Source: Macrostomum lignano
Lineage: Eukaryota
Reading direction: 5' to 3'
Assembly: GCA_002269645.1 (NCBI GenBank)
Contig: NIVC01003710.1
Location: 1-64,000, forward strand
DNA: 64,000 nt
In this document: piece by piece, positions 4,638-63,427 of the stretch
Layout of the letters: each line of letters starts with the position of its first letter
Numbering within the stretch: position 1 is the stretch's first letter
Made by a program: the position numbers and the translations under genes
The notes under the pieces: model-generated
Seen by the model: only the letters and a program-made list of their open reading frames with translations
Databases searched by the model: none
What the model was told of the DNA's origin: nothing

Positions 4638-6687
4638 TAGTCAGTCAGCAAATATCCTACAGCAGTCTCTCTGTGTAGCCCCTCCCCACTTAATGCACTG
4701 TCAGTGCGCCGTTTCTAAAGCAATATACTCGTAGATCGATCAGGTCGAAGCCCGTTGTTCACTGAGCGAGAGATGGGAAAGAGAGAGTGAGCTGGGGGCA
4801 ACTCCGACTGGCAATCTCTATGCTGATGCGGCTTCCAATGAGGCTTACGAGAGTGGGGAAACGGTTGCAGAAGCCCACTCGACCGCGCACACATTGCAGC
4901 AGCTTATACTATAAGTTTAGCCGATGCCTGCAGATTTTCGAATGCTCTACCATCCCATACTCGCCCCCCCCCTTGTAGTCGATCAATCATGCGCAGCTGG
5001 GAAATGAGTCTTAGGGGAAGCTGCGCGTCTGTCCTTAGCATCCACTTTCTCCTGCGGGCCTCTCTCTCTCCCTCTGTCTCTCCATTCTCTTTCTACTCCG
5101 TCGCTCTGGCCCAAATTGAGCTGTTACTCAAGTTGACGCGAACGGCAGCAGACGCGGCCCCACGTGGATAGATTGATCGCCAAGAGAATTTGGTCCCAGC
5201 CGCCAGCATTGCCGCCCGCTATGCCAAAAATTCCACACCGTCCCGCGAGTCCAATAGTTGTTGAATTGACCTCCCGGATGAGAAACTCTTCACAGATCTC
5301 GATGTTGAAAAACCGCCTTCCCAGCTGATCGATTTCATCTCCCTGAGAGGTCCATTTTTTCTCCCAAAGACTCTCTCCATCCTCTTTGCTTTCCCGATTT
5401 CAGCAATCATCAACTCCACCAGCAGAAAATGAACTCGCTTTTAGGGGGAGCGAAAAAAGCCCACACAGAAGGCCATCAGTGGCCGCAGCTGGTTCAAATT
5501 GCCGCCGCTGGTCACCTCTCTCTCGGGTAATTGAAGTCGCCTGTGCAAGTAATGGGCACTGCAGCCTCTGGCGATGAGAAAGTGAAGTGGGAGTCGGGTA
5601 GTTGGGGACGGAGAGAGAGAGGCGGCAAGGAAATCGAAGAGGGAGCTGGTTGAGCTGAAGAGAAGGAGCTGGTCAGGTAGAATATATCGCTCGTCTATAT
5701 AAAAAGTAATTTAGTCCAGCTGGAGCCAGCAGAAAGCGTTTTTCTCCTTTCTCTTCAAGCAGGAGAGAGAGAGACAGAGGAGAAAGTGGATGTCAGGCAA
5801 GCCCCCCGGGGGGGGATTACTCTCTTGGCAACCGCCCAACCTGATTTTTAGTGGCCATTTTAGCGGAAGAAAAGTCGCGATAGACAGTCTACCGAAGATA
5901 CTGGAACTCCCTCAGTTCTATACTCTACTCTGGTATTTCGCCATTAGCAGCTAGCGAGCTCGCATCCCGCAGGACACCCCAATCGCTTTTTCTCTCTCCA
6001 CTGCCCTCCCACTTCAGCCTTGAGGATTCGTGCTCAGGCATGTCTCCTTTCCTCATCTACCGGCTGTCCCCACCCTCATCATCCAAGCCTGCCTTAATTC
6101 CTTTACTTTCACCTCGCTTTCACCCTAAACTGGGCAGGCTGGCCCAGTCTGGGCCTGACTTTTTGGCATCTTTATTGCATTCCAAAGTCGAGCTAAACCC
6201 CAGCCCTGAAAGCCTCTTCTTTCCCCCATTCTGCTCCAGTTCTGCCCCGCAAGCCTGTCCCGCTATCCAATGTTAACCGATGTCTCCCAATACCCTTCCA
6301 ATTTTTACCCAACTCATGTCAGCCCGATCAGGGAGGGGATACGACGAGTTGAGTCCAATATGCAGGATCCTTAAGCCTTGAGCTCAGATGATGAGCACAG
6401 GACTATATAAAAAGCAAAACAGAAGCAGGGTGAGAATAGGGGAATCCGAGAGCATTATGAGAGCACTATTGTTGTATAAAATAGTACAAAAACTTGTCTT
6501 GAACCAACTCTAAAGGTATAGAAAAGATAAAACTAAGGTTTACACCACGACCAAAACTAAGATACTCATAGAAACAGTTGTTAGTGTTTAAATAAATCAG
6601 TCAGCTAAAAAAAGTTTAAAGGATAAGGTATTTCGTAAGCAGGCACAGTGCGGAGATGAGGGAGGCAGGGAGCGTAGCGAAGAGTTC

Positions 6688-7030
6688 GGTAGAGGTAGAG
6701 AGCGGTAGAGGTAGAGAGCGGTAGAGGTAGAGAGCGGTAGAGGTAGAGAGCGGTAGAGGTAGAGAGCGGTAGAGGTAGAGAGCGGTAGAGGTAGAGAGCG
6801 GTAGAGGTAGAGAGCGGTAGAGGTAGAGAGCGGTAGAGGTAGAGAGCGGTAGAGGTAGAGAGCGGTAGAGGTAGAGAGCGGTAGAGGTAGAGAGCGGTAG
6901 AGGTAGAGAGCGGTAGAGGTAGAGAGCGGTAGAGGTAGAGAGCGGTAGAGGTAGAGAGCGGTAGAGGTAGAGAGCGGTAGAGGTAGAGAGCGGTAGAGGT
7001 AGAGAGCGGTAGAGGTAGAGAGCGGTAGAG
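6688..7030 (+). repeat. 16-bp minisatellite (GGTAGAGGTAGAGAGC)n, about 21 copies
   Basis: Direct reading; 16-aa periodic spurious ORFs. Confidence 0.95.
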
Positions 7031-7554
7031 GGAGAATGAAAGAGGGAGGGTGAGAGAGATAATGAGAGAGAGGGAGATAGCGGGAGCGGAAGAGAGAAAG
7101 AGAGAGCGGCCAGAGCTGCAGACGGAACTGGGGAGAGTAAGAGAAGGCCATAAGGCGAAGTCGAGAGGCCGCTAGGAGCGCATCTCTGCCTCCCGATGCA
7201 TTTCCGAAACACGGGTCGACGCAATTTCCTCCTGGCAACTCGCAGGCGACCTGGAGATAGGACTTACTGCAGACAGACGGACAGAAAACCCCCGATTTCT
7301 GTGCAATCCAGCTGCAGACTCCACAGAAATCAAGGAGGGTTCGGCTGGGGGCGATGGGTTTTAACATTCTGAAATTCGAAAAGCAACAATTTTTATCAAT
7401 AATTATGCGTGGCCACTGGACAAGCTAAAATCTACTTGGTCGAAGAACACAGCGGATAATGCAGGTATTCAGGTGGAATTTGATTTGGATTTAACAAGCA
7501 GCGCAATAGCAGGACAGTGTGCGCTCTACCTGGCCAAACTGCAAGCGCCATCTG

Positions 7555-7918
7555 CTGCTGCAGGGGGCTCCCGGCATCCGCTAACCCCTGGCGACCACGA
7601 GCAGCTGGTGCTGCGGTGTTGCTCTGGGAGATCCGGTGATGCCGGGGTTTGCAGCGCGGTTCCCCTCTGGACATTCCAAAACGGAGAGCCTGGAATCGTT
7701 GGAAAGGTCCAGGTTTGGGCCGAGGTAGGCGAACCTGACGTGAGTAAAGGCGACCGGGCAGTCACAGATGATGTGCTCCGCATTCTCAACACAAGAGAGG
7801 CAGAATGGACATTCCTCATTGCGGATTTTCCCATTGCTACCTTCAGCCATGGCCTGAGAGGGCGATGGTTACCGCACTGATATGTCCCTGCGGTTGAGTC
7901 CAAGCAGGGCCCCTATCT
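7555..7918 (-). mobile_element. LINE 3' fragment of the same family as 42116-42599, antisense in ELAV intron 1
   Basis: Reverse complement aligns by eye to 42230-42587 (e.g. GGGCCCTGCTTGGACTCAACCGCAGGGACAT); encodes [20 protein letters not shown]. No TSD found. Confidence 0.8.
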
Positions 7919-10900
7919 GGTGAATTAAACAGAATAGAATAATTCAACAATCCGTTTGAGTCAGATCAGACAGAGCAGTTTCAAACCGACTAGACTAGGA
8001 AAAAAGTTTTAGCCATTGAAATCTTCAAGTCGATCCAAGCTGACTGCGGCTAAACAGTGCCTATTCCCTAGGCGGAGTTCAGATGAGTAAATCTTTCTAA
8101 TATGCGCTTCCTCGTATATAGAGCATAAAGAGTGACAGAGGCAGAGCCCAGGGCCCGGAGGCTGACACAGGGAGACAGACGGACAGACGGATCCCATCCC
8201 GCCCTGGGTGCAATTAAGCTGAGGGCCGACCATGGCCTGTTTCGGCTGTTTAGTATACTGGCTATGGGATCCGTTTAGCTTCAGTTCTTGGCGTCTGCGG
8301 CAGCTGGGCTGGTGTGGAGGGGGGCAATTCCACGCTAATTACTTTAAGTCCCTCCCTCCTCATCCAGTCAATTCCCGTTTTAATTTTATATAACGCTATA
8401 GTTGTTCTCGTCGACCAGGGAGGGGGCTTAGGGAGGGGACATTTAAGTTAATAATTTAGCTGGGAGAATCTCATTTAACCGCCGTCTGTTCGGCTCGCTT
8501 TCTCTTCCCCACTCCCCTTCCCCGCTGCACCCGGACTTGACGCGGTCAAGTTAAAGTTTTCAGCAGAAAAAACCACAGCCAACAGTCGCCATGCGAAGAG
8601 GAGACTGCACACCGAATTCCTCAGTTGGGATAAGGACCGCCCGGCCGGTGAAGGTGTGGAAAGGGCGTGTCAATCAGGCCCATATCGAGCCGGTTAAAAC
8701 TGCGCGCACAGCTGTTGGTATTTTGAAAGAGAGAGGCCAAATCGGGGTGGGGGACGCGCTGGACAGTCCAGAAGCGAATGATGGAGGCAGGGGATATTTC
8801 TCTAGTTCAGGAATTTTCCCCAAATGCGCCATCCAGCGGGTTATCTCTGCTAATCCCAGGGCTTCGACTTCGCTCCCAAGCCGCCCAAGCTGAACATGTT
8901 ATTGGGTGTGTCAGAATATCCACCTGGACCCCGGTGACCAACCAAGAATGGCCCAATGATGGGATCTGTAATATTGCGTGTGTCAGTTTCTCTTCTATTC
9001 TTTTGGCAAACAACATCGTCGTTTGCCAGTAACAAGAAGAAGAGTGTTGGGCAATTCGATAAGTGGAAGAGGCGGAGTTTGGGATGTGGCACTTTGCAGA
9101 GAAAGTAAGCAAAGAGGCTGTTAAAGAGATGGAGATAAGAGAGTAGGATGGATTTCATTGAGTTCAGCAGATATCAGCTGGCAATTATGCAGGGCCAGAG
9201 CGCCTGACCCCGGCCCTCAGCATCCGGGGACGCCACTTGATGAGAGCGGCGCTGAGTCAGCAGTAATGTGAAGATAGATATTTCAAAAGCTTAGCGAACT
9301 GACAGACGTACTGTAAATTGTATACTATTTTATATCTGGTATTAGTGGCGCATGGGCGTCGCAACATCCGGGGAGGGGGGGGGCGATTTCGGCGGCTGCG
9401 TCACGGGGATGTCACGTGACAGAGGATCGCCTCCCCCAATTCAACAGTCAGCGGCTATTGACCGTTAATTAAATCTCGCATCGAATCAGTCACAGCTATG
9501 GGAAGAAAGTCTTTTCCGCTTGCTGGAGTCTTACACATTTTTTATAGATAGAAGCGCAACCTACTGATTATACTGCAACTTCCTACTGGTCAGGCAAGGA
9601 CTGGATATTCTGGACTCGATTTCTGATGCCGTAATCAAATACGGAGATGCTACAGCTCATTCAACTGACTTTGTGTTCTGTGTTGAATGCATCAACAAAA
9701 AACATTTGATTCAACTGCTCACAATTTGGCTTGTTATAGCTGGGCACTGAGACTCTAGACAGAGCAGTCTGTCTGGCCTGTGAGTCACGCCTCCACCCCA
9801 GCTGTCGAGGGGAACTCGACTCGTATCTTCCCGGCCCGACCCATCCCGGGGATTTATTATGCAAATTCTCTCTCGCAGCAGCGGGGCCCTCCTTCGATTC
9901 TCTTTGCCCACGATCTCATCTATCCGTCTGAGAAGGAAGGGAGGAGGATGAGAGGATCTCTGGCAGGGGCGGTGTTTCCCGTAAGACTAAAGATAATCTT
10001 GCCAAATCCTTCGGCTCCCAGCTTCCCAAAGCGACCTCCATCTGCTGAGCTTGAGGGAGCTGCATGTCTTTAGATTCGAAGACGAAGGCAGGGAAAAGAA
10101 GGAGAGAATGGGGAAGTTTGATATGGATGGGAGGCCAGGGGAGGGCCTCTTCCCAAGTTGTTTCGCCCCCTCAGCCCACCAGCTCAAGCTTCGCCATGCT
10201 CCAGTTCTTGAAAAACTTCTCCTTCCCCCTAAAACGGCTCCCGCTGATTGAGTTCGATCGATTCCGGCAGGCTCCATCGAGTGGAGCAAGTTCTCCCCGG
10301 GGAGGGCGAGCCTGCAGGGGAAGATTGAGAGAGAGGGAAGCGAGTCGGAGCGGAGGCTGCCTACTTCTTTTGCTGTCAGCCGCCACTCCAGTTCAGTCTG
10401 GCATGAATGCGACCACTCCAATTCAGTTGTTTGTTTCTGGGCAGCTTCGATTCGGGATTGAGAGGGCGAGAGTATGCTCTTCTTTAGACGGTAACTCTAC
10501 AGTCTCCTTACTTAGCACAAGCAGAGCTCTCTACTGGCTCCAACATCTTGACTTTATTGAACTCAAATTGTCTTTACCTTCGATCCGTATTCCCACGTCT
10601 ACAGATACCTATATTTGAGTCCATTGTGATCCATTAATGAACCTCGACGCTTGTCATCGAGTCAATTGTTAACTGATGAACCTCGATACCTTTATTTGAG
10701 TCCATTATGTACCAGTGGTCAAGCGCGGCGCTCTGATTTGCCAGTGGCCCCAGGCTCGATTTGGGGCTAAACTGGAATCTCGTCTTGGCTCTGCTCGAGC
10801 AATTAACGCCCTTGAGAGCCAACCCCCCAAGGCACAGTGAAGTGTACATGCCAAACGACAAAAAAGTTAGGGCCGCTGTACACTCCTGTGTGGGTGTGTG

Positions 10901-11014
10901 CCTGTGCGTATGACTGCGTATGGGAGTTGGCGGAATGGGCAGTAATGCCTCTCGCCGGTTGTGTGACAATGTCGCTTAAAGTGCGCCATAGTGCACACAG
11001 CCCCCTGACTCTAA

Positions 11015-11407
<393 letters not shown>

Positions 11408-17799: not shown

Positions 17800-18903
17800 C
17801 AGGATCGGGATCAGGATCGGGATCAGGATCGGGATCAGGATCGGGATCAGGATCGGGATCAGGATCGGGATCAGGATCGGGATCAGGATCGGGATCAGGA
17901 TCGGGATCAGGATCGGGATCAGGATCGGGATCAGGATCGGGATCAGGATCGGGATCAGGATCGGGATCAGGATCGGGATCAGGATCGGGATCAGGATCGG
18001 GATCAGGATCGGGATCAGGATCGGGATCAGGATCGGGATCAGGATCGGGATCAGGATCGGGATCAGGATCGGGATCAGGATCGGGATCAGGATCGGGATC
18101 AGGATCGGGATCAGGATCGGGATCAGGATCGGGATCAGGATCGGGATCAGGATCGGGATCAGGATCGGGATCAGGATCGGGATCAGGATCGGGATCAGGA
18201 TCGGGATCAGGATCGGGATCAGGATCGGGATCAGGATCGGGATCAGGATCGGGATCAGGATCGGGATCAGGATCGGGATCAGGATCGGGATCAGGATCGG
18301 GATCAGGATCGGGATCAGGATCGGGATCAGGATCGGGATCAGGATCGGGATCAGGATCGGGATCAGGATCGGGATCAGGATCGGGATCAGGATCGGGATC
18401 AGGATCGGGATCAGGATCGGGATCAGGATCGGGATCAGGATCGGGATCAGGATCGGGATCAGGATCGGGATCAGGATCGGGATCAGGATCGGGATCAGGA
18501 TCGGGATCAGGATCGGGATCAGGATCGGGATCAGGATCGGGATCAGGATCGGGATCAGGATCGGGATCAGGATCGGGATCAGGATCGGGATCAGGATCGG
18601 GATCAGGATCGGGATCAGGATCGGGATCAGGATCGGGATCAGGATCGGGATCAGGATCGGGATCAGGATCGGGATCAGGATCGGGATCAGGATCGGGATC
18701 AGGATCGGGATCAGGATCGGGATCAGGATCGGGATCAGGATCGGGATCAGGATCGGGATCAGGATCGGGATCAGGATCGGGATCAGGATCGGGATCAGGA
18801 TCGGGATCAGGATCGGGATCAGGATCGGGATCAGGATCGGGATCAGGATCGGGATCAGGATCGGGATCAGGATCGGGATCAGGATCGGGATCAGGATCGG
18901 GAT
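17800..18903 (+). repeat. Perfect 12-bp array (CAGGATCGGGAT)92
   Basis: 1104 bp with no visible variant. Confidence 0.97.
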
Positions 18904-19427
18904 TTAGATTGCAGGTAGCTTGTTAAGAGATTAACACTTAATCGGGCATAATGCACGATTAATTGAAGATCAACAATAGACAGATATCAGGAGAAGGGAT
19001 ATCCACTATAAGCCATAAATATACTCGGAAACTGCCACCCATAACGAGTTTTGCTATATTTTATCTTGAAAAAAATTCTAATCTTCATGCTGCGCAGTGC
19101 AGAGGGCAGACAGATGTTTTATGACTAGACCTTCTATATTCTGGTTAATAGAGAAATTCTTGTTGCGCAGAAAAAGGGGAACTTGGCCTGAAGGCGCAGA
19201 GTACGCTTGTACAGTTCACAGGAACCTCTGAGGCTCTCAACCAATGAGGCTTCCTGTACTAGGGAACCAGCTGCAGGAGATACGGGGAGAGAGAAGGACA
19301 GAAACACACTGCTGTACACTGCGGCAAGTCCAAGAACTCACAGTCTGGGGCTAGAGAGAGTGTGTGTGTTTGCGCTGGTAGTGAATATTCTCTTTCTCTC
19401 TGCCTCGCTCAGTTGAACTTGAATAAA

Positions 19428-19890
19428 ATGGTAGAGCCGGTAAAGCTAGCGAATTCAAGCAGCAATACGGCGCAGGGACTTTCGGCTCGTAGTCAGCCAA
19501 AAGCAAAACCACAGTTTTATTATTTAGTAATGAGCGAGAAATTTTCCTGGTTGGAATTTCACCAAGAGTTGAAGTGTGCCGGCCTCACCAAAAAGAGGGC
19601 CGCCTTTCAAACCCGGATTGGCGAGCTGGTGGAAGGCGTCGCAGCCGCCGTGGTTGGCATCAGCGGCGAGTCCTACTACGACTGGATGATGACGGGCAGC
19701 TTCGTGGAAGGCTGGGGCAATAATCTGTTCAGGCTGGACGGCGTCACCGGCGTAGACTCCGACATCGATTGGAGCCAAGTTGTCAAGCACAAGGTGTACC
19801 ACCTGCGCAGCACCTGCCACTCTGTGGTTGACTGCATCAATAGGAAAGACTACGAGTTGAAAAATGGGCATATTGTTGTGAAGAACAGCA
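19428..19890 (+). CDS. Mab-21/cGAS-like nucleotidyltransferase, exon 1 (catalytic GS...DID motif)
   Basis: TGSFVEG...DSDIDW fits the hG[GS]...[DE]h[DE]h nucleotidyltransferase motif as found in invertebrate Mab-21/cGLR proteins; donor GTGAGT at 19891 (phase 1). Full CDS join(19428..19890,20365..20713,20963..21207,21291..24112)=3879 nt, 1292 aa. Start ATG not certain. Confidence 0.75.
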
Positions 19891-19994
19891 GTGAGTGTTG
19901 CATTGGATTGCATTGTATATGAAATCAATAATTGTGTTTTGATTTGACCGGGCAAACGCTCTATGCTTCATTTGTATGCAGCTCACAGTGCTAG

Positions 19995-20280
19995 GGGACC
20001 TAGGGGTCACTGAAGGAACTGGAGATACTCACTGAAGGACCTTGGGGATGCTCACTGAAGGCCCTTGAGGATGCTCACTGAAGGACCTTGAGGATGCTCA
20101 CTGAAGGACCTTGAGGATGCTCACTGAAGGACCTTTGGGATGCTCACTGAAGGACCTTGAGGATGCTCACTGAAGGACCTTTGGGATGCTCACTGAAGGA
20201 CCTTGAGGATGCTTACTAAAGGACCTTGGGGATGCTCACTGAGGGACCTTGGGGATGCTCACTGAGGGACCTTGGGGACC
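19995..20280 (+). repeat. 23-bp minisatellite (GGATGCTCACTGAAGGACCTTGA), intron 1 of the Mab-21 gene
   Basis: Period 23 measured at 20047/20070/20093. Confidence 0.9.
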
Positions 20281-20364
20281 TACGCTCTGAAGGACTCGAT
20301 CCTTTGTGGTCCATAAAACAAGCGGAATTCCGATCTCGCAAAATGACCTCCCCTCGGCTGTCAG

Positions 20365-20713
20365 GTCAGCAGCCGGCATTCGACACGAAGCGTCACGGAC
20401 TGCGCCCCGACACGGACGAGTGTCACGCCTATCCGTGCTGCTCCTACCCGGCCACTGTGCTGGACGATGATCAAGATGAAGTCAACACTGACAGATATCC
20501 AGTGTGCGATAAATTTCAACAGATTATTAAGACGCAGTTTGACAACGAGAATCCGATCGAAGATGTGCACTTTGTTCGGGCCAGCGTGCCAGGCGAGGTG
20601 AACCAGCTGCGCCTAAGCTGCACTAGGCAGGAGCGCTTCATAATGAGTCAGCTAAGCACAGTTCAAGGACAGCTATTCACTGTGCTCAAATATCTTTTCA
20701 AAACTAAGGAGGA
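20365..20713 (+). CDS. Mab-21/cGAS-like protein, exon 2
   Basis: Acceptor TCAG at 20364; DTDECHAYPCCSYP (third-acidic-residue strand) and VHFVRAS...LRLSCTRQERFIMSQLSTVQGQLFTVLKYLFK resemble the Mab-21 HLV.K...WRLSFS..E..L...Q....LK.I.K segment; donor GTAAGT at 20714 (phase 2). Confidence 0.75.
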
Positions 20714-20754
20714 GTAAGTATTGATGTTTCGTTCGATACATTGCCTGCATTAGT

Positions 20755-20786
20755 GTCTGTCGTTCTGTCTGTCTGTCTGTCTGTCC

Positions 20787-20830
<44 letters not shown>

Positions 20831-20833
20831 GCC

Positions 20834-20902
<69 letters not shown>

Positions 20903-20921
20903 TTCTGTCTGTCTGTCTGTC
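20755..20921 (+). repeat. (TCTG)n microsatellite, intron 2 of the Mab-21 gene
   Basis: Direct reading. Confidence 0.95.
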
Positions 20922-20962
20922 TATTAGATGAAAGCTTTAATGATGATCTGTTGCAATCGCAG

Positions 20963-21207
20963 CGAACGCAACCCTAAGTCGGAGAAGAAGATCATCGAGA
21001 GCGTGAAATCCTACCATGCAAAGACCTTGTTAATGAAGTTGCTGCGCGACCGGGACAGCTGGCCAGCAAACGGGCATGACGATGACGTAGAGGAAGATGA
21101 AGAGGCATCAAACAGGCTGGAGCGACTGGTCTGGCGCGGGCTCGGCTTTCTGTTGCGATCGATCACAACTAACCTTCAAGCTGCGGAGGCTGGCGAGGAG
21201 CCAAGCG
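20963..21207 (+). CDS. Mab-21/cGAS-like protein, exon 3
   Basis: Acceptor GCAG at 20962 restores phase 2; KSYHAKTLLMKLL matches the Mab-21 SYHLKT helix; donor GTGGGT at 21208 (phase 1). Confidence 0.7.
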
Positions 21208-21290
21208 GTGGGTGTCCCAATACAGACTAAGTCTGCTTCACTGCACTGCTCACCTGATCACTGCTTACCTGAAAATCTCCTCAATTTCAG

Positions 21291-24112
21291 GCGATTCGAA
21301 GGAACCACCACAGTCTCCATCTCGGCAGGCTTCCGTCGCCTCCAGCAGCGCGTCCACGAAGAGCTCGAACTCGAAGGTTCCGCGAGTACTGGACCACGCA
21401 CTGCTGAAGGACTGCGGTCTCTACTTGAAGCCAAAAAAGCCAAAAGAGGCAACTAAAAGCAGCAAGTCGTCTATTCTGTCTTTTATTTTTCGATCGCCGC
21501 AGGAGCAGCCGAAGAAGGCGATATCTGCGATAGAGGCTCACGCTAGCGCTCTTGAGGAGATGAAGGAGGACCTGCTAGGTCTGATCGGCAAGCGGGGAGA
21601 CATGGACGATGTGCTCGCTGAGACGCCTGGAATTCTGTGGGAGAGAGGTTCAAGCGCAGTCAGTGATTTGAACCGAGAGCTGAAGAAGCTGAACGAGCCG
21701 GAGCTGAAAATGGTTCTGGAAAAATTCGAAAAACTAACTCAGAGTGAGATTGAAAGCATGAGCCAGAGTAAGGACACAAGTCAGGGTCAGGGCGCTAGCC
21801 GTAGCCAGGGTGAGGACACAAGTCAGGGTCAGGGCGCTAGCCATAGCCAGAGTGAGGACCCAAGTCAGGGTCAGGGCGCTAGCCGTAGCCAGGGTGAGGA
21901 CACAAGTCAGGGCCAGGGCGCTAGCCATAGCCAGAGTGAGGACCCAAGTCAGGGTCAGGGCGCTAGCCGTAGCCAGGGTGAGGACACAAGTCAGGGCCAG
22001 GGCGCTAGCCGTAGCCAGAGTGAGGACCCAAGTCAGGGCCAGGGCGCTAGCCGTAGCCAGAGTGAGGACCCAAGTCAGGGCCAGGGCGCTAGCCGTAGCC
22101 AGAGTGAGGACCCAAGTCAGGGCCAGGGCGCTAGCCGTAGCCAGAGCCTGACTCGGAGTGAAAGTGAAAATGACATGAGACAAAGAGAAGAGAAGCTGCG
22201 CAAGAAAATCGCGAATCTGTATGGAAAACTCGGCGATACCTACAAGCTATACGACGTTCTAAAAGACTATCAGACCCGAGTGACGAGTACTTCGGACGAA
22301 AGAAAAAAGCACGGCAAGAAAGAGGATGTCATCGGAGATGAGGCACAATTTCTTTTCATTCCGTTAGCAATGCTGCCGCGAATCACGTTAGACACTCTGC
22401 TTGACGAGAAGGGGCGTCGGTTGAAAAAGGAAAAAACTACCGGAGCTGCCGAAGGTTCAACTGCCGTAGCTGGTGAACGTTCAACTACCGTAGCTGGTGA
22501 AGGTTCAACTACCGGAACTGCCGAAGGTTCAACTACCGGAGCTGCCGAAGGTTCAACTACCGGAGCTGCCGAAGGCTCAACTGCCGTAGCTGGTGAAGAT
22601 TCAACTACCGTAGCTGGCGAAGGTTCAACTACCGGAGCTGCCGAAGGCTCAACTGTCGTAGCTGGCGAAGGTTCAACTACCGGAGCTGGCGAAGGTTCAA
22701 CTACCGGAGCTGGCGAAGGTTCAACTACCGGAGCCGCCCAGGGTTCAACTACCGGAGCTGGCGAAGGTTCAACTACCGGAGCTGGCGAAGGTTCAACTGC
22801 CGTAGCTGGCGAAGGTTCAACTACCGGAGCTGGCGAAGGTTCAACTACCGTAGCTGGTGAAGGTTCAACTACCGGAACTGCCGAAGGTTCAACTACCGGA
22901 GCTGCCGAAGGTTCAACTACCGGAGCTGCCGAAGGCTCAACTGCCGTAGCTGGTGAAGATTCAACTACCGTAGCTGGCGAAGGTTCAACTACCGGAGCTG
23001 CCGAAGGCTCAACTGTCGTAGCTGGCGAAGGTTCAACTACCGGAGCTGGCGAAGGTTCAACTACCGGAGCTGGCGAAGGTTCAACTACCGGAGCCGCCCA
23101 GGGTTCAACTACCGGAGCTGGCGAAGGTTCAACTACCGGAGCTGGCGAAGGTTCAACTGCCGTAGCTGGCGAAGGTTCAACTACCGGAGCTGGCGAAGGT
23201 TCAACTACCGGAGCCGCCCAGGGTTCAACTACCGGAGCTGGCGAAGGTTCAACTACCGGAGCTGGCGAAGGTTCAACTACCGGAGCTGCCGAAGGTTCAA
23301 CTACCGGAGCTGCCGAAGGTTCAACGAACGAACCTTTCAAGGATTCGGCAGTCGACCAAAAAGCAATAAATGAGCTTAAAAAGGCTTACATTAAAGTCTG
23401 GATTGTACTGAGAAGCCTGAGCGATTCAGAGAGGAATTCATCTGAGCCTAGCCAGACCCAGGGCCCTAGCCGTAGCCAGGACGCTGGCCAAAGGCCCAGC
23501 GACAGCTCACTGCAGAAGGCCAAGCAATGGATCAAAAACAAGGCGTTTCTAAAGACCACTTGGCTGTGCCTGGAGATCATGGAGAATCTAAAGAATGGCC
23601 ACATAGAGGAGGTGAAACGGCTCCTCAGGGAAACCGATTGTCAGCCAACACGATGGATCAAACCAGAGAAGGATTACGACTTTGCCAAGCTGCTCAGAGA
23701 AAAGGACTGCGTATGGATATTTCACTACTTCATCAGGCCCAATATAAAGATCAGCTACAACTACTTGAACGACGTGCAGAATCCGGTCGAAAGAGGCACC
23801 AAAATTGAAAAACGAACGGAATACGAGAAAGGCGAAGGCAGGGTGTTCGAGTACATTAACGGTGTGCGCAAGGACTGGCTGATTCACCTGGTTGTCAATC
23901 AGGACGACAAGAAAAGCCGGCAGCCGAGTCTCACTGTCAATTTCGACGGCCTGCTGGACCGATTCAGGCGTCGATTCGGTGACGGCAACGTGGACGTCGA
24001 TTCGGCAGCACAGATAAAGGACGACGACTATTTGGACACAATGAAAAACTGCCTGTTTGACCCACGCGAGGCGGAGAGGCTGGAGGCCGAGAGGTTGAAA
24101 AATCATAGATAA
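21291..24112 (+). CDS. Mab-21/cGAS-like protein, exon 4 (helical region, two tandem peptide arrays, C-terminal globular part)
   Basis: Acceptor TTTCAG at 21290 joins in phase to the 966-codon ORF; non-repetitive flanks are open and protein-like; stop TAA ends at 24112. Confidence 0.7.
21761..22148 (+). repeat. Coding 42-bp repeat, 9 units (SQGQGAS[R/H]SQ[S/G]ED[P/T])
   Basis: In frame within exon 4; a degenerate tenth copy near 23445-23490. Confidence 0.92.
22435..23325 (+). repeat. Coding 24-bp repeat, about 37 units (A[G/A]EGSTT[G/V]), with a 360-bp higher-order duplication
   Basis: In frame; sequence at 22501-22850 recurs at 22861-23210. Confidence 0.92.
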
Positions 24113-25302: not shown

Positions 25303-26103
25303 CTAGGCAACCGCGGTTGCTAAGAACTCTCCGCACTCGTACTTGGCCCGCACGAAGGACTCCCTGACGTCGCTCGGCGAGTCCCGCCTCGGCCTCCGGC
25401 CATCTGGCAGTCGGGCCTCCAATACGGCGTTACCAAGCCGGTTGCCAATGACGCACAGCGGCATAGCCTGGGCGGGAGTCCAGCTGTCCAGCGCCAGGGA
25501 GCGAACCCGGCTGGCGTGGGTGCCGAGCCGCCTGTGGGCGCCGGAGCACAGGATGCACACCAGCAGGCCGTGGCTGACGATCGCCCAGTCTGGCGCCGGG
25601 GCGTGGCAGTCAGCGCAGAGCTCGTTGCCGGGCAAGCTGACGGCCGCCTTCAACAGGATGTCGGCGGCGCCAGACTGAGACGCGGAGTCCTCCCGGAGGC
25701 AGCGTCGGCGATGGCTGCGGCATCGGCGGAGACCGGCAAGGATGCCGGAGCTGAGCGCCGCGAGCCAGGCGTCGCGATCGGCAGCGCTGGCGGCGACGAA
25801 TCGGCGACGTCGGCCGTCAGCCGTTACGAGCTGGAAGGCGGCCGAGCCGGCGGAGGCGTCGGCGACGGTAGCTGCCGCCTGCGCCAGGTCGACGATTTCG
25901 GTCGCGGCAGATTTATTAGAATCGGCGTCGATGTGCACAAATAGGCCGTCCGCGGTGACCCGGGCTGCCCGCCTTCGCGGCGCGAGGTGGCGAAGCGCGT
26001 CCGGCAGGCGGCGTCGGGTCAGCAGAAGGCGGCCTTCGTGGAGGTCGGCAGGTTGGCGGTGGCGGCAGCTCTGCGTTGAGCTGGATGTCGGAGGCGTCCG
26101 CCA
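25303..26103 (-). CDS. AGAP/centaurin-gamma-like ArfGAP protein, last exon (PH-like C-half and ArfGAP zinc finger)
   Basis: FQLVTADGRRRRFVAASAADRDAWLAALSSGI (PH C-terminal helix); CADC...WAIVSHGLLVCILCSGAHRRLGTHASRVRSLALDSW...VRAKYE is the ArfGAP C4 finger with the arginine finger; acceptor TTTCCCAG at 26104. Confidence 0.9.
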   Translation of the reverse strand, partial: WRTPPTSSSTQSCRHRQPADLHEGRLLLTRRRLPDALRHLAPRRRAARVTADGLFVHIDADSNKSAATEIVDLAQAAATVADASAGSAAFQLVTADGRRRRFVAASAADRDAWLAALSSGILAGLRRCRSHRRRCLREDSASQSGAADILLKAAVSLPGNELCADCHAPAPDWAIVSHGLLVCILCSGAHRRLGTHASRVRSLALDSWTPAQAMPLCVIGNRLGNAVLEARLPDGRRPRRDSPSDVRESFVRAKYECGEFLATAVA

Positions 26104-26119
26104 CTGGGAAACCGGGATC

Positions 26120-26630
26120 GGAATCTTTTGTGAGGATTGGGATCTTTTGTGAGGATTGGAATCTTTTGTGAGAATTGGGATCTTTTGTGAGGATTGGGAT
26201 CTCTTGTGAGGATTGGAATCTTTTGTGAGAATTGGGATCTTTTGTGAGGATTGGGATCTCTTGTGAGGATTGGAATCTTTTGTGAGAATTGGGATCTTTT
26301 GTGAGAATTGGGATCTTTTGTGAGAATTGGGATCTTGTGCGGATTGGGATCTTTTGTGAGGATTGGGATCTTTTGTGAGGATTGGGATCTTTTGTGAGGA
26401 TTGGGATCTTTTGTGAGGATTGGGATCTTTTGTGAGGATTAGGATCCTTTGTGAGGATTGGGATCTTTTGTGAGGATTGGGATCTTTTGTGAGGATTGGG
26501 ATTTTTTGTGAGGATTGGGATTTTTTGTGAGGATTGGGATCTTTTGTGAGGATTAGGATCCTTTGTGAGGATTGGGATCTTTTGTGAGGATTGGGATCTT
26601 TTGTGAGGATTGGGATCTTTTGTGAGGATT
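26120..26630 (+). repeat. 19-bp minisatellite (GATTGGGATCTTTTGTGAG), ArfGAP last intron
   Basis: Period 19. Confidence 0.93.
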
Positions 26631-26731
26631 GACATATGCAAATGAGATTTAAGCCCATTTGCATGCAGATCATGACAATCACAAATTAAAAGAACTCATT
26701 TCAGAACCAATCAACAGTCTATAGTACTCAC

Positions 26732-26812
26732 TTCATCTGGCTGTTCAAGGGAAAACTCGAGCTTCGATTTCAAAGTCGGTCTGGCCGAGCAGTCCTGACG
26801 CCTAGCGGTTTC
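26732..26812 (-). CDS. ArfGAP gene, predicted 81-nt internal exon
   Basis: Minus-strand acceptor TTCCTCCAG and donor GTGAGT bracket 27 open codons (ETARRQDCSARPTLKSKLEFSLEQPDE), phase 0-0. No homology support. Confidence 0.6.
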
Positions 26813-26889
26813 CTGGAGGAACAAAAATTACAACCCGTCACTTAATGACCCGAAAGATTTTAGTTAGAAATAACTGGAGCACCAAAGAT

Positions 26890-27995
26890 AGAGTGAGAAG
26901 GAAGGAGAGGGAGAGAGGGAGGGTGATGGAGCGAAGAAGGGAGAGGGAGACAAGAAGGGAGAGGGAGAGAGGGAGGGAAAGGGAGAGAGGGAGGGAGAGG
27001 GAGAGAAGAAGGGGGAGGGAGAGAAGAAGGGAGAGGGAGAGAGGGAGGGAGAGAAATAGAGGGAGGGAGAGGGAGCGAAGAAGGGAGAGGGAGAGAGGGA
27101 GGGAGAGGAATAGAGGGAGGGAGAGGGAGCGAAGAAGGGAGAGGGAGAAAGGGAGGGAGAGGGAGAGAGGGAGGGAGAGGGAGCGAAGAAGGGAGAGGGA
27201 GAAAGGGAGGGAGAGGGAGAGAGGAAGGGAGAGGAAGAAAAAAAAGAGGCGGAAAGAAGAAACGAGAGAGAAGAAGGGAGAGGGATAGAGGGAGGGAGAA
27301 GGAGCGAAGAAGGGAGAGGGAGAGAGGGAGGGAGAGGGAGAGAGGGAGGGAGAGGAAGAGAGGGAGGGAGAGGAAGAGAGGGAGGGAGAGGGAGAGAGGG
27401 AGGGAGAGGGAGAGAGGGAGGGAGAGGGAGCGAAGAAGAGAGAGGGAGAGAGGGAGGGAGAGGGAGAGAGGGAGGGAGAGGAAGAGAGGGAGGGAGAGGG
27501 AGAGAGGGAGGGAGAGGGAGAGAGGGAGGGAGAGGGAGCGAAGAAGAGAGAGGGAGAGAGGGAGGGAGAGGGAGAGAGGGAGGGAGAGGAAGAGAGGGAG
27601 GGAGAGGGAGAGAAGAAGGGAGAGGGAGAGAGGGAGGGAGAGGGAGAGAAGGAGGGAGAGGGAGAGAAGGAGGGAGAGGGAGAGAGGGAGGGAGAGGGAG
27701 AGGAGGGAGAGGAAGAGAGGGAGGGAGAGGGAGAGAAGAAGGGAGAGGGAGAGAGGGAGGGAGAGGGAGAGAAGGAGGGAGTGGGAGAGAAGGAGGGAGA
27801 GGGAGAGAGGGAGGGAGAGGGAGAGAGGGAGGGAGAGGAAGAGAGGGAGGGAGAGGGAGAGAAGAAGGGAGAGGGAGAGAGGGAGGGAGAGGGAGAGAAG
27901 AAGGGAGAGGGAGAGAGGGAGGGAGAGGGAGAGAAGGAGGGAGAGGGAGAGAGGGAGGGAGAGGGAGAGGAGGGAGAGGGAGAGAGGGAGGGAGA
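26890..27995 (+). repeat. Nearly pure polypurine (GGAGAG/GGAGAA-type) tract
   Basis: About 1.1 kb almost entirely G/A. Confidence 0.95.
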
Positions 27996-28060
27996 GGCAA
28001 GTGATAGATCTACCGAGAAAGGGTGAGAAGTAGCCACACGCACTGATGAAGAATTCTCAC

Positions 28061-28261
28061 CCTCAGCCTCCATGCAAGCCCTGCAGGCTCCACAGCAGCA
28101 GCCGAGACCCGGTATCTCCTCTGTCTGCTGGCTGCCGCTGTCCAGAGCCGCTGCATAATCTGGGCAGCGCTTTGGCACTTCAGTGTCGCGGCATCCGGGC
28201 AGTCGGCATCAAAGCCAGTCGGAAATAATGAGCAAACGGATGTCTCAACATGCCGGGACAT
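28061..28261 (-). CDS. ArfGAP gene, predicted first coding exon
   Basis: Acceptor CTTCTTCAG at 28296, ATG at 28261, open frame to donor GTGAGA at 28060 (phase 0, compatible with downstream exons). No homology support. Confidence 0.5.
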
Positions 28262-28859
28262 TTTTCTACAAACGGTTGTTAGACTTGAGAGCTGACTGAA
28301 GAAGAGAGGTAAATTGAGATGGTGATGCCGTGACATGGACGGATATATATGTCCGTTTGTCAGTCCTAGCTGCTCTCTGATTGGCTGGCGCGGTGAGAGG
28401 TGGAGGGGCGGGAGGTCAAGCCAGGTGTTTGCGCGCGTCGATTAAGATAATAAAAGGTGTTTTCTTCGGCGGATTTTCAACTGCAGGTGAAGGTAGGTGA
28501 AACTCCAAGGTTTGTTTGGCTCATTATTCAAGGAGAAGAACTTCGCGGTTCAGCACTGTGGCGCCAATGATGGGTCAGCGCATGGGCCCGTAGTGGCAGT
28601 GCTGATTATGGCTACTCATATTATCAATGGGCTTAGCGGGTTTAAAATGCCACTCTGAGAATTGTCTGCGGCGATGAGCAGCTGATAGTCCTTGACAGTT
28701 GCGACTCAGAATAAGATGAGCTATTTTAAAGTAAGTGTGAAAAATAGCACTTGCCAACCAATTGTCGAGAATTGTCTTCAGTTATTGTTTTTAGATGATT
28801 TTCTAACTGAGGAGGGAGTAAGTATTGATATTGCGTTCGATACATTGCCTGCGTTAGTT

Positions 28860-30180
<1,321 letters not shown>

Positions 30181-31004
30181 GCTTTATAGAAGGTTCTAAG
30201 AAAAAGCGTTATAATTCGCCCAGCTTCTGGGACGCCTTTACTTTAAAGTTAATTTAATGGCCACCTTATTTCAAGGCAATGGTAACTAACTGTTTTCTGT
30301 CTGTAAAAAATAAATAATTAATTCTGGTCTCTCGTTTAGGTACAAGTAATTTAAACGATGCCAGGCCGCACAAGCGGACACCTGTGGGTGACACGAGTTG
30401 CTATGCTGGGAGCAGAAGGCTTAGAAAAATATTACATTGGATTTCATAACAGAAAGATGTTATTTGAGCCTGGGACTTTTGCCCTCAGGGCTTGGCAGTA
30501 ACCCCCCTGCTCGTACCGCCCTCATTAAGAAGCCAATCAGTGTTTTCTATCTCCACAGCAATATTTCTATCACGGTGGAAGTGCATTTCAAAATAGTGTT
30601 ATATTTATACTTTGAGCAGGCAAAGGGTCTTTCATCCAAGCGACACGGATAAACTGTTCGGAAACTTTCACCTTGCTGGCTTGTAACTGACTCAGATCAA
30701 GGTGGCCAGGTTAACTGAGTAACCGGTCAGCGTGTTTGCAATCAGCGGGAGCAGCCACGCGTCTTAACAAATGACCCGCATGTCTCCCAATTCTCATTTT
30801 TAGCTCTCTGGCCTCGGGGCTTCAATGAGTTCTCGGGCAAGAGAGGCAGCTCACAGTGGAGGCGGCTGCTCAACAGGGGTTCGCTTGTCGTGTGCCGACA
30901 ATAAAGTCAGAATATCTGACCTAGATCGCTTTTTCATGCAGTTCCAGAGCTAGACAGCCGGAGAGGAAACTTAACAGGTTTGAGCCCTCGATTTTTAAAT
31001 ACCC

Positions 31005-32500: not shown

Positions 32501-33004
32501 TCACAGAACCCCAGTCACCCTGGCCCGACTTGTCCAGTCGTCTCGACTGACGTAGCAGCCGCTGACAACCCGCCGGCCGGAGAAGCCGCTCCGGCCGTGC
32601 AGCAGGCGCCAGTTGTCGATGAGAATGACAGTGCCGGGCCTGAGGCTCAGCCACACCTGAGACACCGGCCGGTTGAGAATCTCGCTAAGGTGAGCGTAGG
32701 CGGCCAAGAAGGCGGCCACTTCGGCCTGGGGCACAGCGGCTAGCGAGTCCAAATCGTACGGATTGAAGCGGATCTGGTAGAGACTTCCGCCGCTCTCGGG
32801 GTCCAGTTTGAGTACGGTGTCCAGGCACCGGGTGTGGTGCGTCGGCTGCCCGGCCTCGAACTCCTGATACTGATGAAACACTGGGGCGCTCGCCAGCAGG
32901 TGAAAATGCGCCGCATTCTCTTGGCGAAGAGTCTCAGCCGCTTGGAAACCGTCGGCAAGGCAGGTGTCCCCGCCGACTGGGGCCGGCTCCAGCACGTGGA
33001 ACAC
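32501..33004 (-). CDS. TMLHE: Trimethyllysine dioxygenase, exon 2
   Basis: VFHVLE...GGDTCLADGF...YQIRFNPYD...LRPGTVILIDNWRLLHGRSGFSGRRVVSGCYVSRDD matches the TMLH/BBOX 2OG-Fe(II) fold (distal His, 2OG-binding Arg); acceptor CTGCAG at 33005. Confidence 0.92.
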   Translation of the reverse strand: MFHVLEPAPVGGDTCLADGFQAAETLRQENAAHFHLLASAPVFHQYQEFEAGQPTHHTRCLDTVLKLDPESGGSLYQIRFNPYDLDSLAAVPQAEVAAFLAAYAHLSEILNRPVSQVWLSLRPGTVILIDNWRLLHGRSGFSGRRVVSGCYVSRDDWTSRARVTGVL

Positions 33005-33054
33005 CTGCAGATTAGGGAGCGTTGATGGGAGAGAGTCCAGACAGTCGCCTCTCA

Positions 33055-33380
33055 TTAGAATCTCACTTTAGATAATCGCGTCTCTTGAGAATCCCACCCA
33101 AAGTAGTCGCCTCTCCGGAGAATCTCACCCTCGATAATCGCCTCTCCCGAGAATCTCACCCTCGATAATCGCCTCTCCCGAGAATCTCACCCTCGATAAT
33201 CGCCTCTCCCGAGAATCTCACCCTCGATAATCGCCTCTCCCGAGAATCTCACCCAAGATAATCGGCTCTCCCGAGAATCTCACCCTCGATAATCACCTCT
33301 CTCGAGAATCTCACCCAAGATAATCGCCTCTTCCCGAGAATCTCATCCTCCATAATCGCCTCTCCTGAGAATCTCACCTT
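33055..33380 (+). repeat. 31-bp minisatellite (GAGAATCTCACCCTCGATAATCGCCTCTCCC), TMLHE intron
   Basis: Period 31. Confidence 0.9.
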
Positions 33381-63392: not shown

Positions 63393-63427
63393 GTGAGCTG
63401 ACCAGTTATAGCGGTTGCTATGTGCTT

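What the first reader, a model, noticed from the sequence alone, without database searches (positions are those of the whole stretch)
19428..24112. Giant multi-exon cGAS-like receptor (Mab-21 nucleotidyltransferase) candidate hidden across four separate ORFs
Seen: four ORFs that look unrelated in the track splice in phase into one 1292-aa protein. Motifs in order: GS at 19695, DSDID at 19755-19769, DTDECHA (third acidic position), LRLSCTRQE...LKYLFK, SYHAKTLL. Established: this order defines the Mab-21/cGAS fold, and cGAS-like receptors (cGLRs) with an intact acidic triad make cyclic dinucleotide second messengers in animal innate immunity. Inference: a catalytically intact, highly divergent cGLR (20 residues between GS and DID, longer than canonical) with a long unique extension, suggesting an uncharacterised nucleic-acid or stress-sensing system in this lineage. 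No STING-like partner is in the window.
Basis: partly seen in the sequence, partly recalled or inferred. Interest (0 to 1): 0.8.

Follow-up and report, generated by a model that had tools for sequence, protein, structure and literature searches.

The report
Flatworm cGAS-like receptor gene
This is a real, transcribed four-exon gene of the flatworm Macrostomum lignano. It encodes a cGAS-like (Mab-21) nucleotidyltransferase with an intact active-site motif and a long, repeat-filled tail, but it belongs to a family already catalogued in this species, so it is solid rather than new.

Summary
Four ORFs on the + strand join through three GT-AG introns, in phase, into a 1292-aa protein (19428-24112). 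The public M. lignano annotation (PAA73767.1 and three near-identical copies, all "hypothetical protein") uses the same three junctions.

The cGLR/Mab-21 assignment is supported:
- A family profile hits cGAS and cGLR1 in the PDB.
- hhalign to Pfam-positive invertebrate Mab-21 proteins gives 99.9% probability and aligns GS, DxD and the third Asp.
- Two AlphaFold models match only cGAS-family structures.

The novelty claim is not supported. Li et al. 2023 already listed M. lignano cGLRs and cloned five paralogues. The 20-residue GS-DxD spacing is family-wide and lies within their published motif. The "unique extension" is mostly two in-frame minisatellites (42 nt x9, 24 nt x37) whose copy number differs between gene copies. 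It also contains a segment homologous to the paralogues' C-terminal region.

This copy lacks the family's ankyrin repeats and has an acidic core. Its ligand, its product and the presence of a STING partner remain untested. Verdict: a new member of a known kind, of low-to-moderate interest.

The parts
19410..19427 (+). Likely 5' end of the mature mRNA. A pyrimidine-rich tract plus CAG acceptor ends at 19412, followed by a 15-nt leader before the first ATG.
   Evidence: The public protein models start in frame at 19413 (LNLNKM.., P0001) or 19416 (NLNKM.., P0012). Use as an SL trans-splice acceptor is an inference from the known prevalence of trans-splicing in M. lignano.
19428..19890 (+). Exon 1 (aa 1-155). 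Encodes the N-terminal helix and NTase beta-1/beta-2, with M88-T-G90-S91 (19689-19700) and D112-I-D114-W (19761-19772).
   Evidence: G90, S91, D112 and D114 are invariant in the 12-sequence family alignment.
19891..20364 (+). Intron 1 (GTGAGT...CAG). Contains a 23-nt x 11.9 minisatellite at 20007-20278.
   Evidence: The same junction is used in PAA73767.1.
20365..20713 (+). Exon 2 (aa 155-271). Carries the third catalytic Asp D172 (20415-20417, in DTDECHA), the CC pair, HFVRAS, LRLSCTRQE and VQGQLF..LKYLFK.
20714..20962 (+). Intron 2 (GTAAGT...GCAG). Contains (TGTC)x42 at 20754-20922.
20963..21207 (+). Exon 3 (aa 271-353). Start of the Mab-21 C-terminal helical lobe, with K-SYHAKTLL (21009-21032) and an acidic insertion NGHDDDVEEDEEAS.
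   Evidence: (PF20266, 13 bits, aa 258-301).
21208..21290 (+). Intron 3 (GTGGGT...TTTCAG).
21291..24112 (+). Exon 4 (aa 353-1292 plus stop). Holds the end of the Mab-21 domain and the whole C-terminal extension.
   Evidence: One 2.8-kb open frame. It is open with the same structure in public loci L001 (1292 aa) and L002 (1125 aa).
21389..21433 (+). LDHALLKDCGLYLKP. A degenerate counterpart of the Mab-21 C-terminal motif (CMPHFFxxDAxLYFK in paralogues, CPnYFIPexNmF in other invertebrate Mab-21 proteins). It is preceded by a ~35-aa Ser-rich insertion.
   Evidence: Aligned by MAFFT and hhalign. AlphaFold places short strands here with pLDDT 55-80.
21761..22146 (+). In-frame minisatellite 1. It is 42 nt x 9.2 and encodes (SQGQGASRSQ[SG]ED[PT])n, an acidic, disordered stretch.
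   Evidence: TRF. The g1 copy has 5.2 copies. The public protein model has 2.
22435..23325 (+). In-frame minisatellite 2. It is 24 nt x 37.1 and encodes (GEGSTTGA)n, pI ~4.
   Evidence: TRF. The g1 copy has 23.1 copies. The public protein model has 3. pI.
23525..23734 (+). Tail segment aa 1098-1167 (QWIKNKAFLKTTWLCLEIMENLKNGH...DCVWIFHYFI). It is homologous to a conserved block (WCKCAALC..AHLKFGE..DWAWRFC) in the paralogues' C-terminal extension.
   Evidence: An HMM of 14 paralogue C-terminal regions scores the tail at 17.7 bits, against a maximum of 6.1 bits in 2000 shuffles. hhalign gives E = 2.5e-4 and probability 43%.

Best explanation
The locus is an intact, transcribed four-exon gene of Macrostomum lignano. 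It matches Mlig007158, which has four near-identical genomic copies, and at protein level it is closest to g2/g4. It encodes a divergent member of the cGAS-like receptor (cGLR) branch of the Mab-21 nucleotidyltransferases.

Shown:
- The gene structure.
- Homology over both lobes of the cGLR domain (aa ~35-405).
- Conservation of the G-S activation-loop motif, of D112/D114 and of D172.
- Purifying selection between gene copies.

Inferred: like other cGLRs, the enzyme rests inactive. On binding an unknown ligand it uses the two-metal site formed by D112, D114 and D172 to join two NTPs into a cyclic dinucleotide (or related) second messenger, which a downstream receptor reads.

This paralogue differs from its roughly 60 relatives in the same genome in three ways. 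It has lost the N-terminal ankyrin repeats. Its NTase core is acidic. Its family-type C-terminal extension has been inflated by a Ser-rich insert and two in-frame, copy-number-variable minisatellites that encode about 420 aa of acidic, disordered sequence.

Confidence is about 0.9 that it is a cGLR-family gene. It is about 0.5 that it is catalytically active as a second-messenger synthase.
For: Gene model. The same junctions appear in PAA73767.1, whose annotation is RNA-seq/transcriptome-guided.

Homology:
- Paralogues hit at E = 1e-32.
- 60 word-index hits, almost all from M. lignano, many carrying PF20266 plus ankyrin repeats.
- 188 hits in the exhaustive profile search. Its distant members are Pfam PF03281 + PF20266 proteins.
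- Family profile against the PDB: mouse cGAS 3e-7, Sp-cGLR1 (8gjy) 1.4e-6, human cGAS 2.8e-4. MB21D2 and MAB21L1 score much weaker.
- hhalign against 12 invertebrate Mab-21 proteins: probability 99.9%, E = 7.6e-32, 291 columns. GS, SDxD, the third D, RxSxSxxE, SYHxKT and the C-terminal motif all align.

Structure: two AlphaFold models (pTM 0.50 and 0.69). The top 41 and top 50 Foldseek PDB hits all belong to the cGAS/cGLR/MAB21 family, with probability ~1.0 and ~340-380 aligned columns.

Motif: M-T-G-S, X20, D-I-D-W, X55, T-D-E fits the Li et al. definition. These residues are invariant or nearly invariant in the family.

Selection: window against the g1 copy gives pN/pS of 0.23 over 2.6 kb of non-repeat CDS (12 synonymous, 10 non-synonymous, p = 7e-4) and 0.18 in the NTase part.

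Precedent: Li et al. 2023 curated M. lignano proteins of this family as cGLRs and cloned five of them.
Against: - On its own the protein does not reach Pfam thresholds. PF20266 scores 13 bits against a cut-off of 24.1, and PF03281 gives no hit.
- phmmer against the PDB finds nothing.
- The N-lobe half of the family profile alone finds no PDB sequence.
- AlphaFold confidence is modest and TM-scores stay below 0.5. No coordinates were available, so the metal-site geometry was not measured.
- The third Asp has polar rather than hydrophobic neighbours (T-D-E).
- The C-terminal CMPHFF motif and a conserved Trp are degenerate in this paralogue.
- The core is acidic, pI 5.5-6.0. Li et al. associate nucleic-acid-sensing cGLRs with a more positively charged surface.
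- None of the five M. lignano enzymes in the Li et al. screen carries the note that marks the 15 selected active enzymes.
- cGAS and STING are reported lost in other flatworms, so a downstream receptor is not established.
- The tail alone shows no selection signal (1 synonymous against 4 non-synonymous changes).
Confidence: 0.6

Rival explanations
1. It is a Mab-21-fold protein that has kept the motif but no longer works as a signalling enzyme. It would act as a scaffold or regulator, as MAB21L1/2 are thought to, with the disordered acidic repeats and the C-terminal region as the functional parts.
For: - Acidic core.
- Degenerate C-terminal lobe motif and an insertion in the helical lobe.
- Loss of the ankyrin module that almost all paralogues carry.
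- No M. lignano enzyme among the annotated active cGLRs of the published screen.
- STING reported absent from other flatworms.
Against: - G90, S91, D112, D114 and D172, together with RxSxT..E and SYHAKT, are all retained.
- The NTase exons are under purifying selection (pN/pS 0.18).
- The family profile scores cGAS and cGLR1 far above MAB21L1 and MB21D2.
Confidence: 0.25
2. The real product is shorter, about 920 aa as in GenBank. Most repeat units would be removed from the mRNA, so the "giant" 1292-aa size is an artefact of reading straight through the genomic arrays.
For: All four public protein models keep only 2 and 3 repeat units. Arrays whose unit length is a multiple of 3 stay open whether or not they are translated.
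Against: - The public genomic locus has the full arrays.
- None of the 25 equivalent placements of the 294-nt gap in array 1 has GT..AG ends.
- No single deletion in array 2 reproduces the public protein.
- The annotation rests on short-read transcript assemblies, which collapse such repeats.
- In the g1 copy the arrays differ in copy number yet stay in frame with the downstream tail.
Confidence: 0.15
3. It is a decaying duplicate (pseudogene) of the ankyrin-cGLR family that happens still to be open.
For: It has lost the ankyrin repeats, carries insertions and repeat expansions, and shows no selection signal in the tail.
Against: - The frame is open over 3.9 kb in at least three independent genomic copies.
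- pN/pS is 0.23 with p = 7e-4.
- The annotation is transcript-based.
- All splice sites are canonical.
Confidence: 0.04

Closest known systems
Macrostomum lignano ankyrin-cGLR paralogues. Examples are PAA93208.1 and PAA68676.1 (nos. 92 and 93 of the Li et al. 2023 screen) and P0002/P0005/P0015 here.
   Same: - The NTase plus Mab-21 C-lobe is 33-40% identical.
- The active-site layout is identical: [MI]TGS-X20-DIDW ... D-x-C-[HY]-A..CC.
- Both have HLVRA, LRVS.S.QE, VQGQLF..K..FK and YHAKTLL.
- Both have a C-terminal extension with a shared block.
   Different: - No N-terminal ankyrin repeats.
- Extra acidic and Ser-rich insertions.
- CMPHFF is degenerated to VLDHALL.
- Two minisatellite-encoded disordered regions.
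- An acidic core.
Vertebrate cGAS (for example human 4O69/6CT9, mouse 4K8V).
   Same: Same fold by Foldseek over ~340-380 columns. The family profile hits at 3e-7 to 3e-4. The GS activation loop, the acidic triad, RLSxS..E and SYHxKT are shared.
   Different: Only 10-14% identity. The GS-to-DxD loop is longer (20 residues here; 11 in human cGAS from my own knowledge, not checked). There is no basic N-terminal tail. The cGAS zinc thumb was not looked for at the equivalent position. The ligand is unknown.
Invertebrate cGLRs of molluscs and cnidarians (for example Sp-cGLR1, 8GJY) and the unnamed Pfam-positive Mab-21 proteins found by the profile search.
   Same: hhalign gives probability 99.9% across both lobes. 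The motif style GSxxEG...SDxDx is shared. The 8gjy sequence hits at 1.4e-6.
   Different: Those proteins have a shorter GS-DxD loop and are mostly single-domain. Several are proven dsRNA/dsDNA-activated enzymes, whereas nothing is proven for the flatworm family.
MAB21L1 (5EOG) and MB21D2 (7LT1).
   Same: Same fold. Both are weak Foldseek and profile hits.
   Different: They score much lower than cGAS and cGLR1 (E = 0.24-0.5 against 1e-7). [quoted passage not shown]

Membership tests
cGAS-like receptors (cGLR), as defined by Li et al. 2023 | Active-site motif h[QT]GS [X8-20] [DE]h[DE]h [X50-90] h[DE]h. The final selection used the relaxed form G[S/G] ... [E/D]h[E/D] X50-90 [E/D]. | tested here: met
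   The protein has M88-T-G-S91, X20, D112-I-D114-W115, X55, T171-D172-E173. The spacing sits at the upper limit. The neighbours of the third Asp are polar, so the strict h[DE]h is not literally met, but the relaxed form is. The same holds for screened paralogues nos. 92 and 93.
cGAS-like receptors (cGLR), as defined by Li et al. 2023 | [quoted passage not shown] | tested here: met
   hhalign aligns 291 columns from the N-terminal helix to the C-terminal motif, with probability 99.9% and E = 7.6e-32. The PDB profile hits cover profile positions 97-292. The N-lobe half alone gives no PDB sequence hit.
cGAS-like receptors (cGLR), as defined by Li et al. 2023 | Predicted structural homology to cGAS/cGLR by AlphaFold modelling. 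| tested here: met
   Two models were made. All top Foldseek PDB hits are cGAS, cGLR, MAB21L1 or MB21D2, with probability ~1.0 and best E = 1e-5. TM-scores are only 0.38-0.46 and core pLDDT is 50-90.
cGAS-like receptors (cGLR), as defined by Li et al. 2023 | Ligand-dependent synthesis of a nucleotide second messenger. | not testable with these tools
   This needs biochemistry. The five M. lignano paralogues in the published screen have an empty Note column, and that column names the selected active enzymes.
cGLR-STING pathway | A STING (or other cyclic-dinucleotide) receptor encoded in the same genome. | not tested
   Only the 64-kb window could be scanned. The literature reports STING loss in other flatworms. 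Macrostomum is absent from Li et al. Table S5.
Pfam Mab-21 (PF03281 NTase domain + PF20266 HhH/H2TH-like domain) | A hit above the curated gathering score. | tested here: not met
   For the spliced protein, PF20266 scores 13 bits against a cut-off of 24.1 (E = 0.12) at the expected place, aa 258-301. PF03281 gives no hit. Many paralogues pass PF20266, and distant profile hits pass both. This is a sensitivity failure of a single divergent sequence, not a contrary result.
M. lignano ankyrin-cGLR expansion | N-terminal ankyrin repeats fused to the cGLR domain. | tested here: not met
   tblastn with paralogue ankyrin regions finds no ankyrin-like hit anywhere in the window at E <= 0.1. The annotated mRNA starts 15 nt upstream of the ATG.
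M. lignano ankyrin-cGLR expansion | The family-specific C-terminal extension downstream of the Mab-21 domain. | tested here: inconclusive
   The tail block aa 1098-1167 matches the paralogue HMM at 17.7 bits, and 0 of 2000 shuffles reach that score. hhalign gives probability 43%. Two further collinear matches, DHALLKDCGLYLK and FLFIPLAMLP, are only marginal: 56 and 25 of 2000 shuffles do as well.

The most novel reading that the evidence does not exclude
Unlike planarians and parasitic flatworms, Macrostomum lignano may keep a large lineage-specific cGLR signalling system whose products are read by something other than canonical STING. Within it, this ankyrin-less, acidic paralogue would sense a non-nucleic-acid cue. 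Its copy-number-variable disordered repeats would tune localisation or assembly, for example into condensates.
Probability: 0.1. Interest if true: 0.7.

Novelty: new member of a known kind. Interest (0 to 1): 0.3.

Why it matters
Flatworms are usually described as having lost cGAS-STING signalling. M. lignano is the exception, with dozens of cGLR-like genes that are known but uncharacterised. This locus adds a correctly assembled, full-length gene model for an atypical paralogue that has no ankyrin repeats, an acidic core and repeat-inflated tail. Public records label it only as a hypothetical protein, with a repeat-collapsed sequence and no domain call. It could serve as a test case for two open questions: what these flatworm enzymes make, and what reads their product. 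By itself it does not change what is known about cGLRs.

Tried and rejected
1. Pfam on the spliced protein gave only a sub-threshold PF20266 hit. phmmer against the PDB found nothing.

2. The spliced protein could not be submitted to the exhaustive search or to AlphaFold, because it is not a contiguous window translation. I used exon translations plus database proteins (A2). For structure I used the near-identical public proteins P0012 and P0193.

3. A full-length family profile against the PDB was swamped by ankyrin hits. It was redone on a trimmed alignment.

4. The N-lobe-only profile against the PDB gave no cGAS hit. Residue correspondence was obtained by hhalign to Pfam-positive Mab-21 proteins instead.

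5. My first idea was that FHYFIRPN in the tail (23720-23743) is the Mab-21 C-terminal "YFIP" motif, which would make the repeats an insertion inside the domain. I rejected it. BLASTP shows no such similarity. MAFFT and hhalign place the motif at LDHALLKDCGLYLK (21389-21430) instead.

6. A protein search with the 261-aa tail returned nothing, not even P0012, which contains the tail identically. This is a tool miss and was not used as evidence of absence.

7. HMM tests of the two inter-repeat segments against the paralogue region gave collinear but only marginal matches.

8. I tested whether the shorter public protein could arise by canonical splicing inside the arrays. No GT..AG placement reproduces it.

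9. Searches for STING, a second Mab-21 copy and ankyrin repeats in the window found none.

10. Rfam gave nothing in the window at gathering score.

11. Literature searches found no paper on this gene and none on STING in Macrostomum.

12. Li et al. Table S1 is truncated in the held copy, so I could not tell whether this exact protein is among their 3,020 cGLRs.

Full report
**Origin and observation.** The window is flatworm DNA. Every close protein hit comes from Macrostomum lignano, and the region aligns at about 98-99% identity to GenBank contig NIVC01000994.1 of assembly GCA_002269645.1.

- Exon 1, 19428-19890, donor GTGAGT.
- Exon 2, 20365-20713, acceptor ..GTCAG|, donor GTAAGT.
- Exon 3, 20963-21207, acceptor ..CGCAG|, donor GTGGGT.
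- Exon 4, 21291-24112, acceptor ..TTTCAG|.

All quoted motifs are at the quoted coordinates.

**Independent support for the gene model.** The GenBank protein PAA73767.1 (P0012, "hypothetical protein BOX15_Mlig007158g4, partial") has the same three junctions..VVKNSS|QQPAFD....FKTKE-D-ERNPK.. and ..EEPSG|DSKEPP... It belongs to a cluster of four genomic copies, g1 to g4. At protein level the window agrees best with g2/g4.

That annotation was built from RNA-seq and a de novo transcriptome mapped onto the genome. The junctions therefore have indirect transcript support. The annotated models begin at 19413/19416, directly after a pyrimidine tract plus CAG. This fits a trans-splice acceptor, with the ATG at 19428 as the first start codon; that last point is an inference.

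In public loci L001 (g4) and L002 (g1) the same exons, GT-AG sites and open frame are present. Between the window and g1 the non-repeat CDS differs at 12 synonymous and 10 non-synonymous positions. That gives pN/pS of 0.23 (p = 7e-4) overall and 0.18 for the NTase exons. The gene is under purifying selection and is not a pseudogene.

**What the protein is.** On its own the protein is too divergent for routine tools:
- Pfam gives only a sub-threshold PF20266 (Mab-21_C) hit at aa 258-301.
- phmmer finds nothing in the PDB.

Family-level evidence is strong:
- The N-terminal 353 aa hit M. lignano paralogues at 1e-32.
- A profile finds about 60 word-index hits, almost all from M. lignano. Most are ankyrin repeats fused to a PF20266-positive domain.
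- The exhaustive search finds 188 proteins. Its distant members are bona fide PF03281 + PF20266 Mab-21 proteins.
- A 12-sequence profile trimmed to the domain hits mouse cGAS (3e-7), the coral cGLR1 structure 8GJY (1.4e-6) and human cGAS (2.8e-4). MB21D2 and MAB21L1 score far lower.
- hhalign of that family alignment against 12 invertebrate Mab-21 proteins gives 99.9% probability and E = 7.6e-32 over 291 columns. It aligns GS, SDxD, the third Asp, RxSxSxxE, SYHxKT and the C-terminal CPxYFxP-type motif.
- Two AlphaFold models of the near-identical public proteins (pTM 0.50 and 0.69, core pLDDT 50-90) retrieve only cGAS, cGLR, MAB21L1 or MB21D2 structures as top hits. Probability is ~1.0 over 340-380 columns, but TM-scores are only 0.38-0.46.

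The fold assignment is therefore secure. The fine geometry of the metal site was not measured.

**Active site.** Li et al. 2023 define cGLRs by h[QT]GS-X8-20-[DE]h[DE]h-X50-90-h[DE]h. This protein has M-T-G90-S91, 20 residues, D112-I-D114-W, 55 residues, T-D172-E.
- G90, S91, D112, D114 and D172 are invariant in the 12-sequence alignment and nearly invariant among 28-31 paralogues.
- The polar neighbours of D172 break the strict "h[DE]h". The same is true of paralogues that Li et al. accepted.

**The extension.** The cGLR domain ends near aa 405. A ~35-aa Ser-rich insert precedes a degenerate C-terminal motif, LDHALLKDCGLYLK. The remaining ~890 aa contain two tandem arrays:
- 42 nt x 9.2 at 21761-22146, encoding SQGQGASRSQSEDP-like units.
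- 24 nt x 37.1 at 22435-23325, encoding GEGSTTGA units.

Together the two arrays encode about 420 aa of acidic sequence, pI 4.0-4.4, which AlphaFold models with low confidence.

Three observations bear on the arrays:
- Copy numbers differ between gene copies. The g1 copy has 5.2 and 23.1 units and gives an 1125-aa ORF.
- Both periods are multiples of three. Most of the other roughly 22 strong arrays in this repeat-rich window are not.
- The public 926-aa protein keeps only 2 and 3 units although its own genomic locus has the full arrays. No GT..AG placement reproduces that gap. The short public model most likely reflects collapse of repeats in a short-read transcript assembly.

The 261-aa tail is not unique either. 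Residues 1098-1167 match an HMM of the paralogues' C-terminal extension at 17.7 bits, against at most 6.1 bits in 2000 shuffles. hhalign gives E = 2.5e-4. Two further collinear matches are only marginal. The architecture is thus the family's cGLR domain plus C-terminal region, minus the ankyrin repeats, plus low-complexity expansions.

**Mechanism.** The best-supported reading is a ligand-activated nucleotidyltransferase that makes a nucleotide second messenger. It rests on fold, motif, conservation and selection.

Several points weigh against activity or nucleic-acid sensing:
- The NTase core is acidic, pI 5.5-6.0.
- The C-lobe motif is degenerate.
- The five M. lignano enzymes cloned by Li et al. 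are not among their 15 annotated active enzymes.
- cGAS and STING are reported lost from other flatworms.

Whether M. lignano has STING could not be tested. The window has none, on a weak test.

[quoted passage not shown] Their tables nevertheless contain M. lignano ankyrin-cGLRs and five cloned representatives of this family. I could not tell whether this exact protein is in their truncated Table S1. No paper mentions the gene.

The finding is a correct, useful annotation of a divergent paralogue that public records leave as "hypothetical protein" with no domain call. It is a new member of a known kind, not a new system.

Noticed in passing
window 17800-18903: A perfect (CAGGATCGGGAT)x92 tandem array lies about 0.5 kb upstream of the gene's mRNA start. 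The g1 copy (L002) has 60 copies. It creates two long spurious ORFs, (GS)n and (DRDQ)n.
   Followed up: partly
whole window: 26 TRF rows with score >= 400 (24 distinct arrays) cover about 16.5 kb, roughly 26% of the 64 kb. Only the two arrays inside exon 4 (periods 42 and 24) and four others (33, 12, 18, 72) have periods divisible by 3.
   Followed up: partly
window 25303-26682 (-): This ORF encodes PH + ArfGAP domains (ArfGap E = 4.5e-32) and lies convergent with the cGLR gene. Its upstream part stays open only because a 19-nt x 27 array (26115-26631) has no stop in any frame. The resulting 19-aa pseudo-repeat KIPILTKDPNPHKRSQSSQ is probably not coding.
   Followed up: no
window 62659-63396 (+); 43065-44585 (+); 39701-40402 (-); 32501-33055 (-): Other genes in the window: a SIX-class homeobox exon (SIX1_SD 6e-45 plus homeodomain), a weak rhodopsin-type GPCR-like ORF, a reverse-transcriptase fragment (RVT_1 6e-23) and a TauD-family dioxygenase exon (7e-29).
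   Followed up: no
L001 (NIVC01000994.1) 6001-11019 versus window 19416-24112: The GenBank proteins PAA73767.1 and PAA50135.1 (926 aa) omit 98 aa of array 1 and about 272 aa of array 2, although the deposited genomic sequence encodes the full 1292 aa. No canonical intron explains the gap. It looks like a repeat-collapse artefact of the transcript-based annotation.
   Followed up: yes
window 19800-19871 and 20421-20441 (aa H125, C130, C136, H148, C174, H175, C179, C180): A cluster of Cys/His residues conserved in the family lies between the DxD strand and just after the third Asp (H..C..C..GH ... D-x-C-H-A..CC). It might be a structural metal site. It is not at the position I recall for the cGAS zinc thumb.
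   Followed up: no
database records for this family (P0001, P0033, P0044, P0059, P0196 and others): UniProt automatic names for fragments of these M. lignano proteins look spurious. Examples are Bromo domain-containing, RING-type E3 ubiquitin transferase, Exodeoxyribonuclease V subunit alpha, GXGXG and Pecanex_C.
   Followed up: no
window 23327-24109 (tail): The word-indexed protein search with the tail returned no hit at all, although P0012 contains the identical 261 aa. This is a miss of the search tool rather than a biological result.
   Followed up: yes
window 26000-30200: This stretch has extreme strand composition: GC skew up to 0.76 and AT skew down to -0.57. The cause is long GA-rich (18-nt x 62) and (TCTG)x330 arrays.
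   Followed up: no
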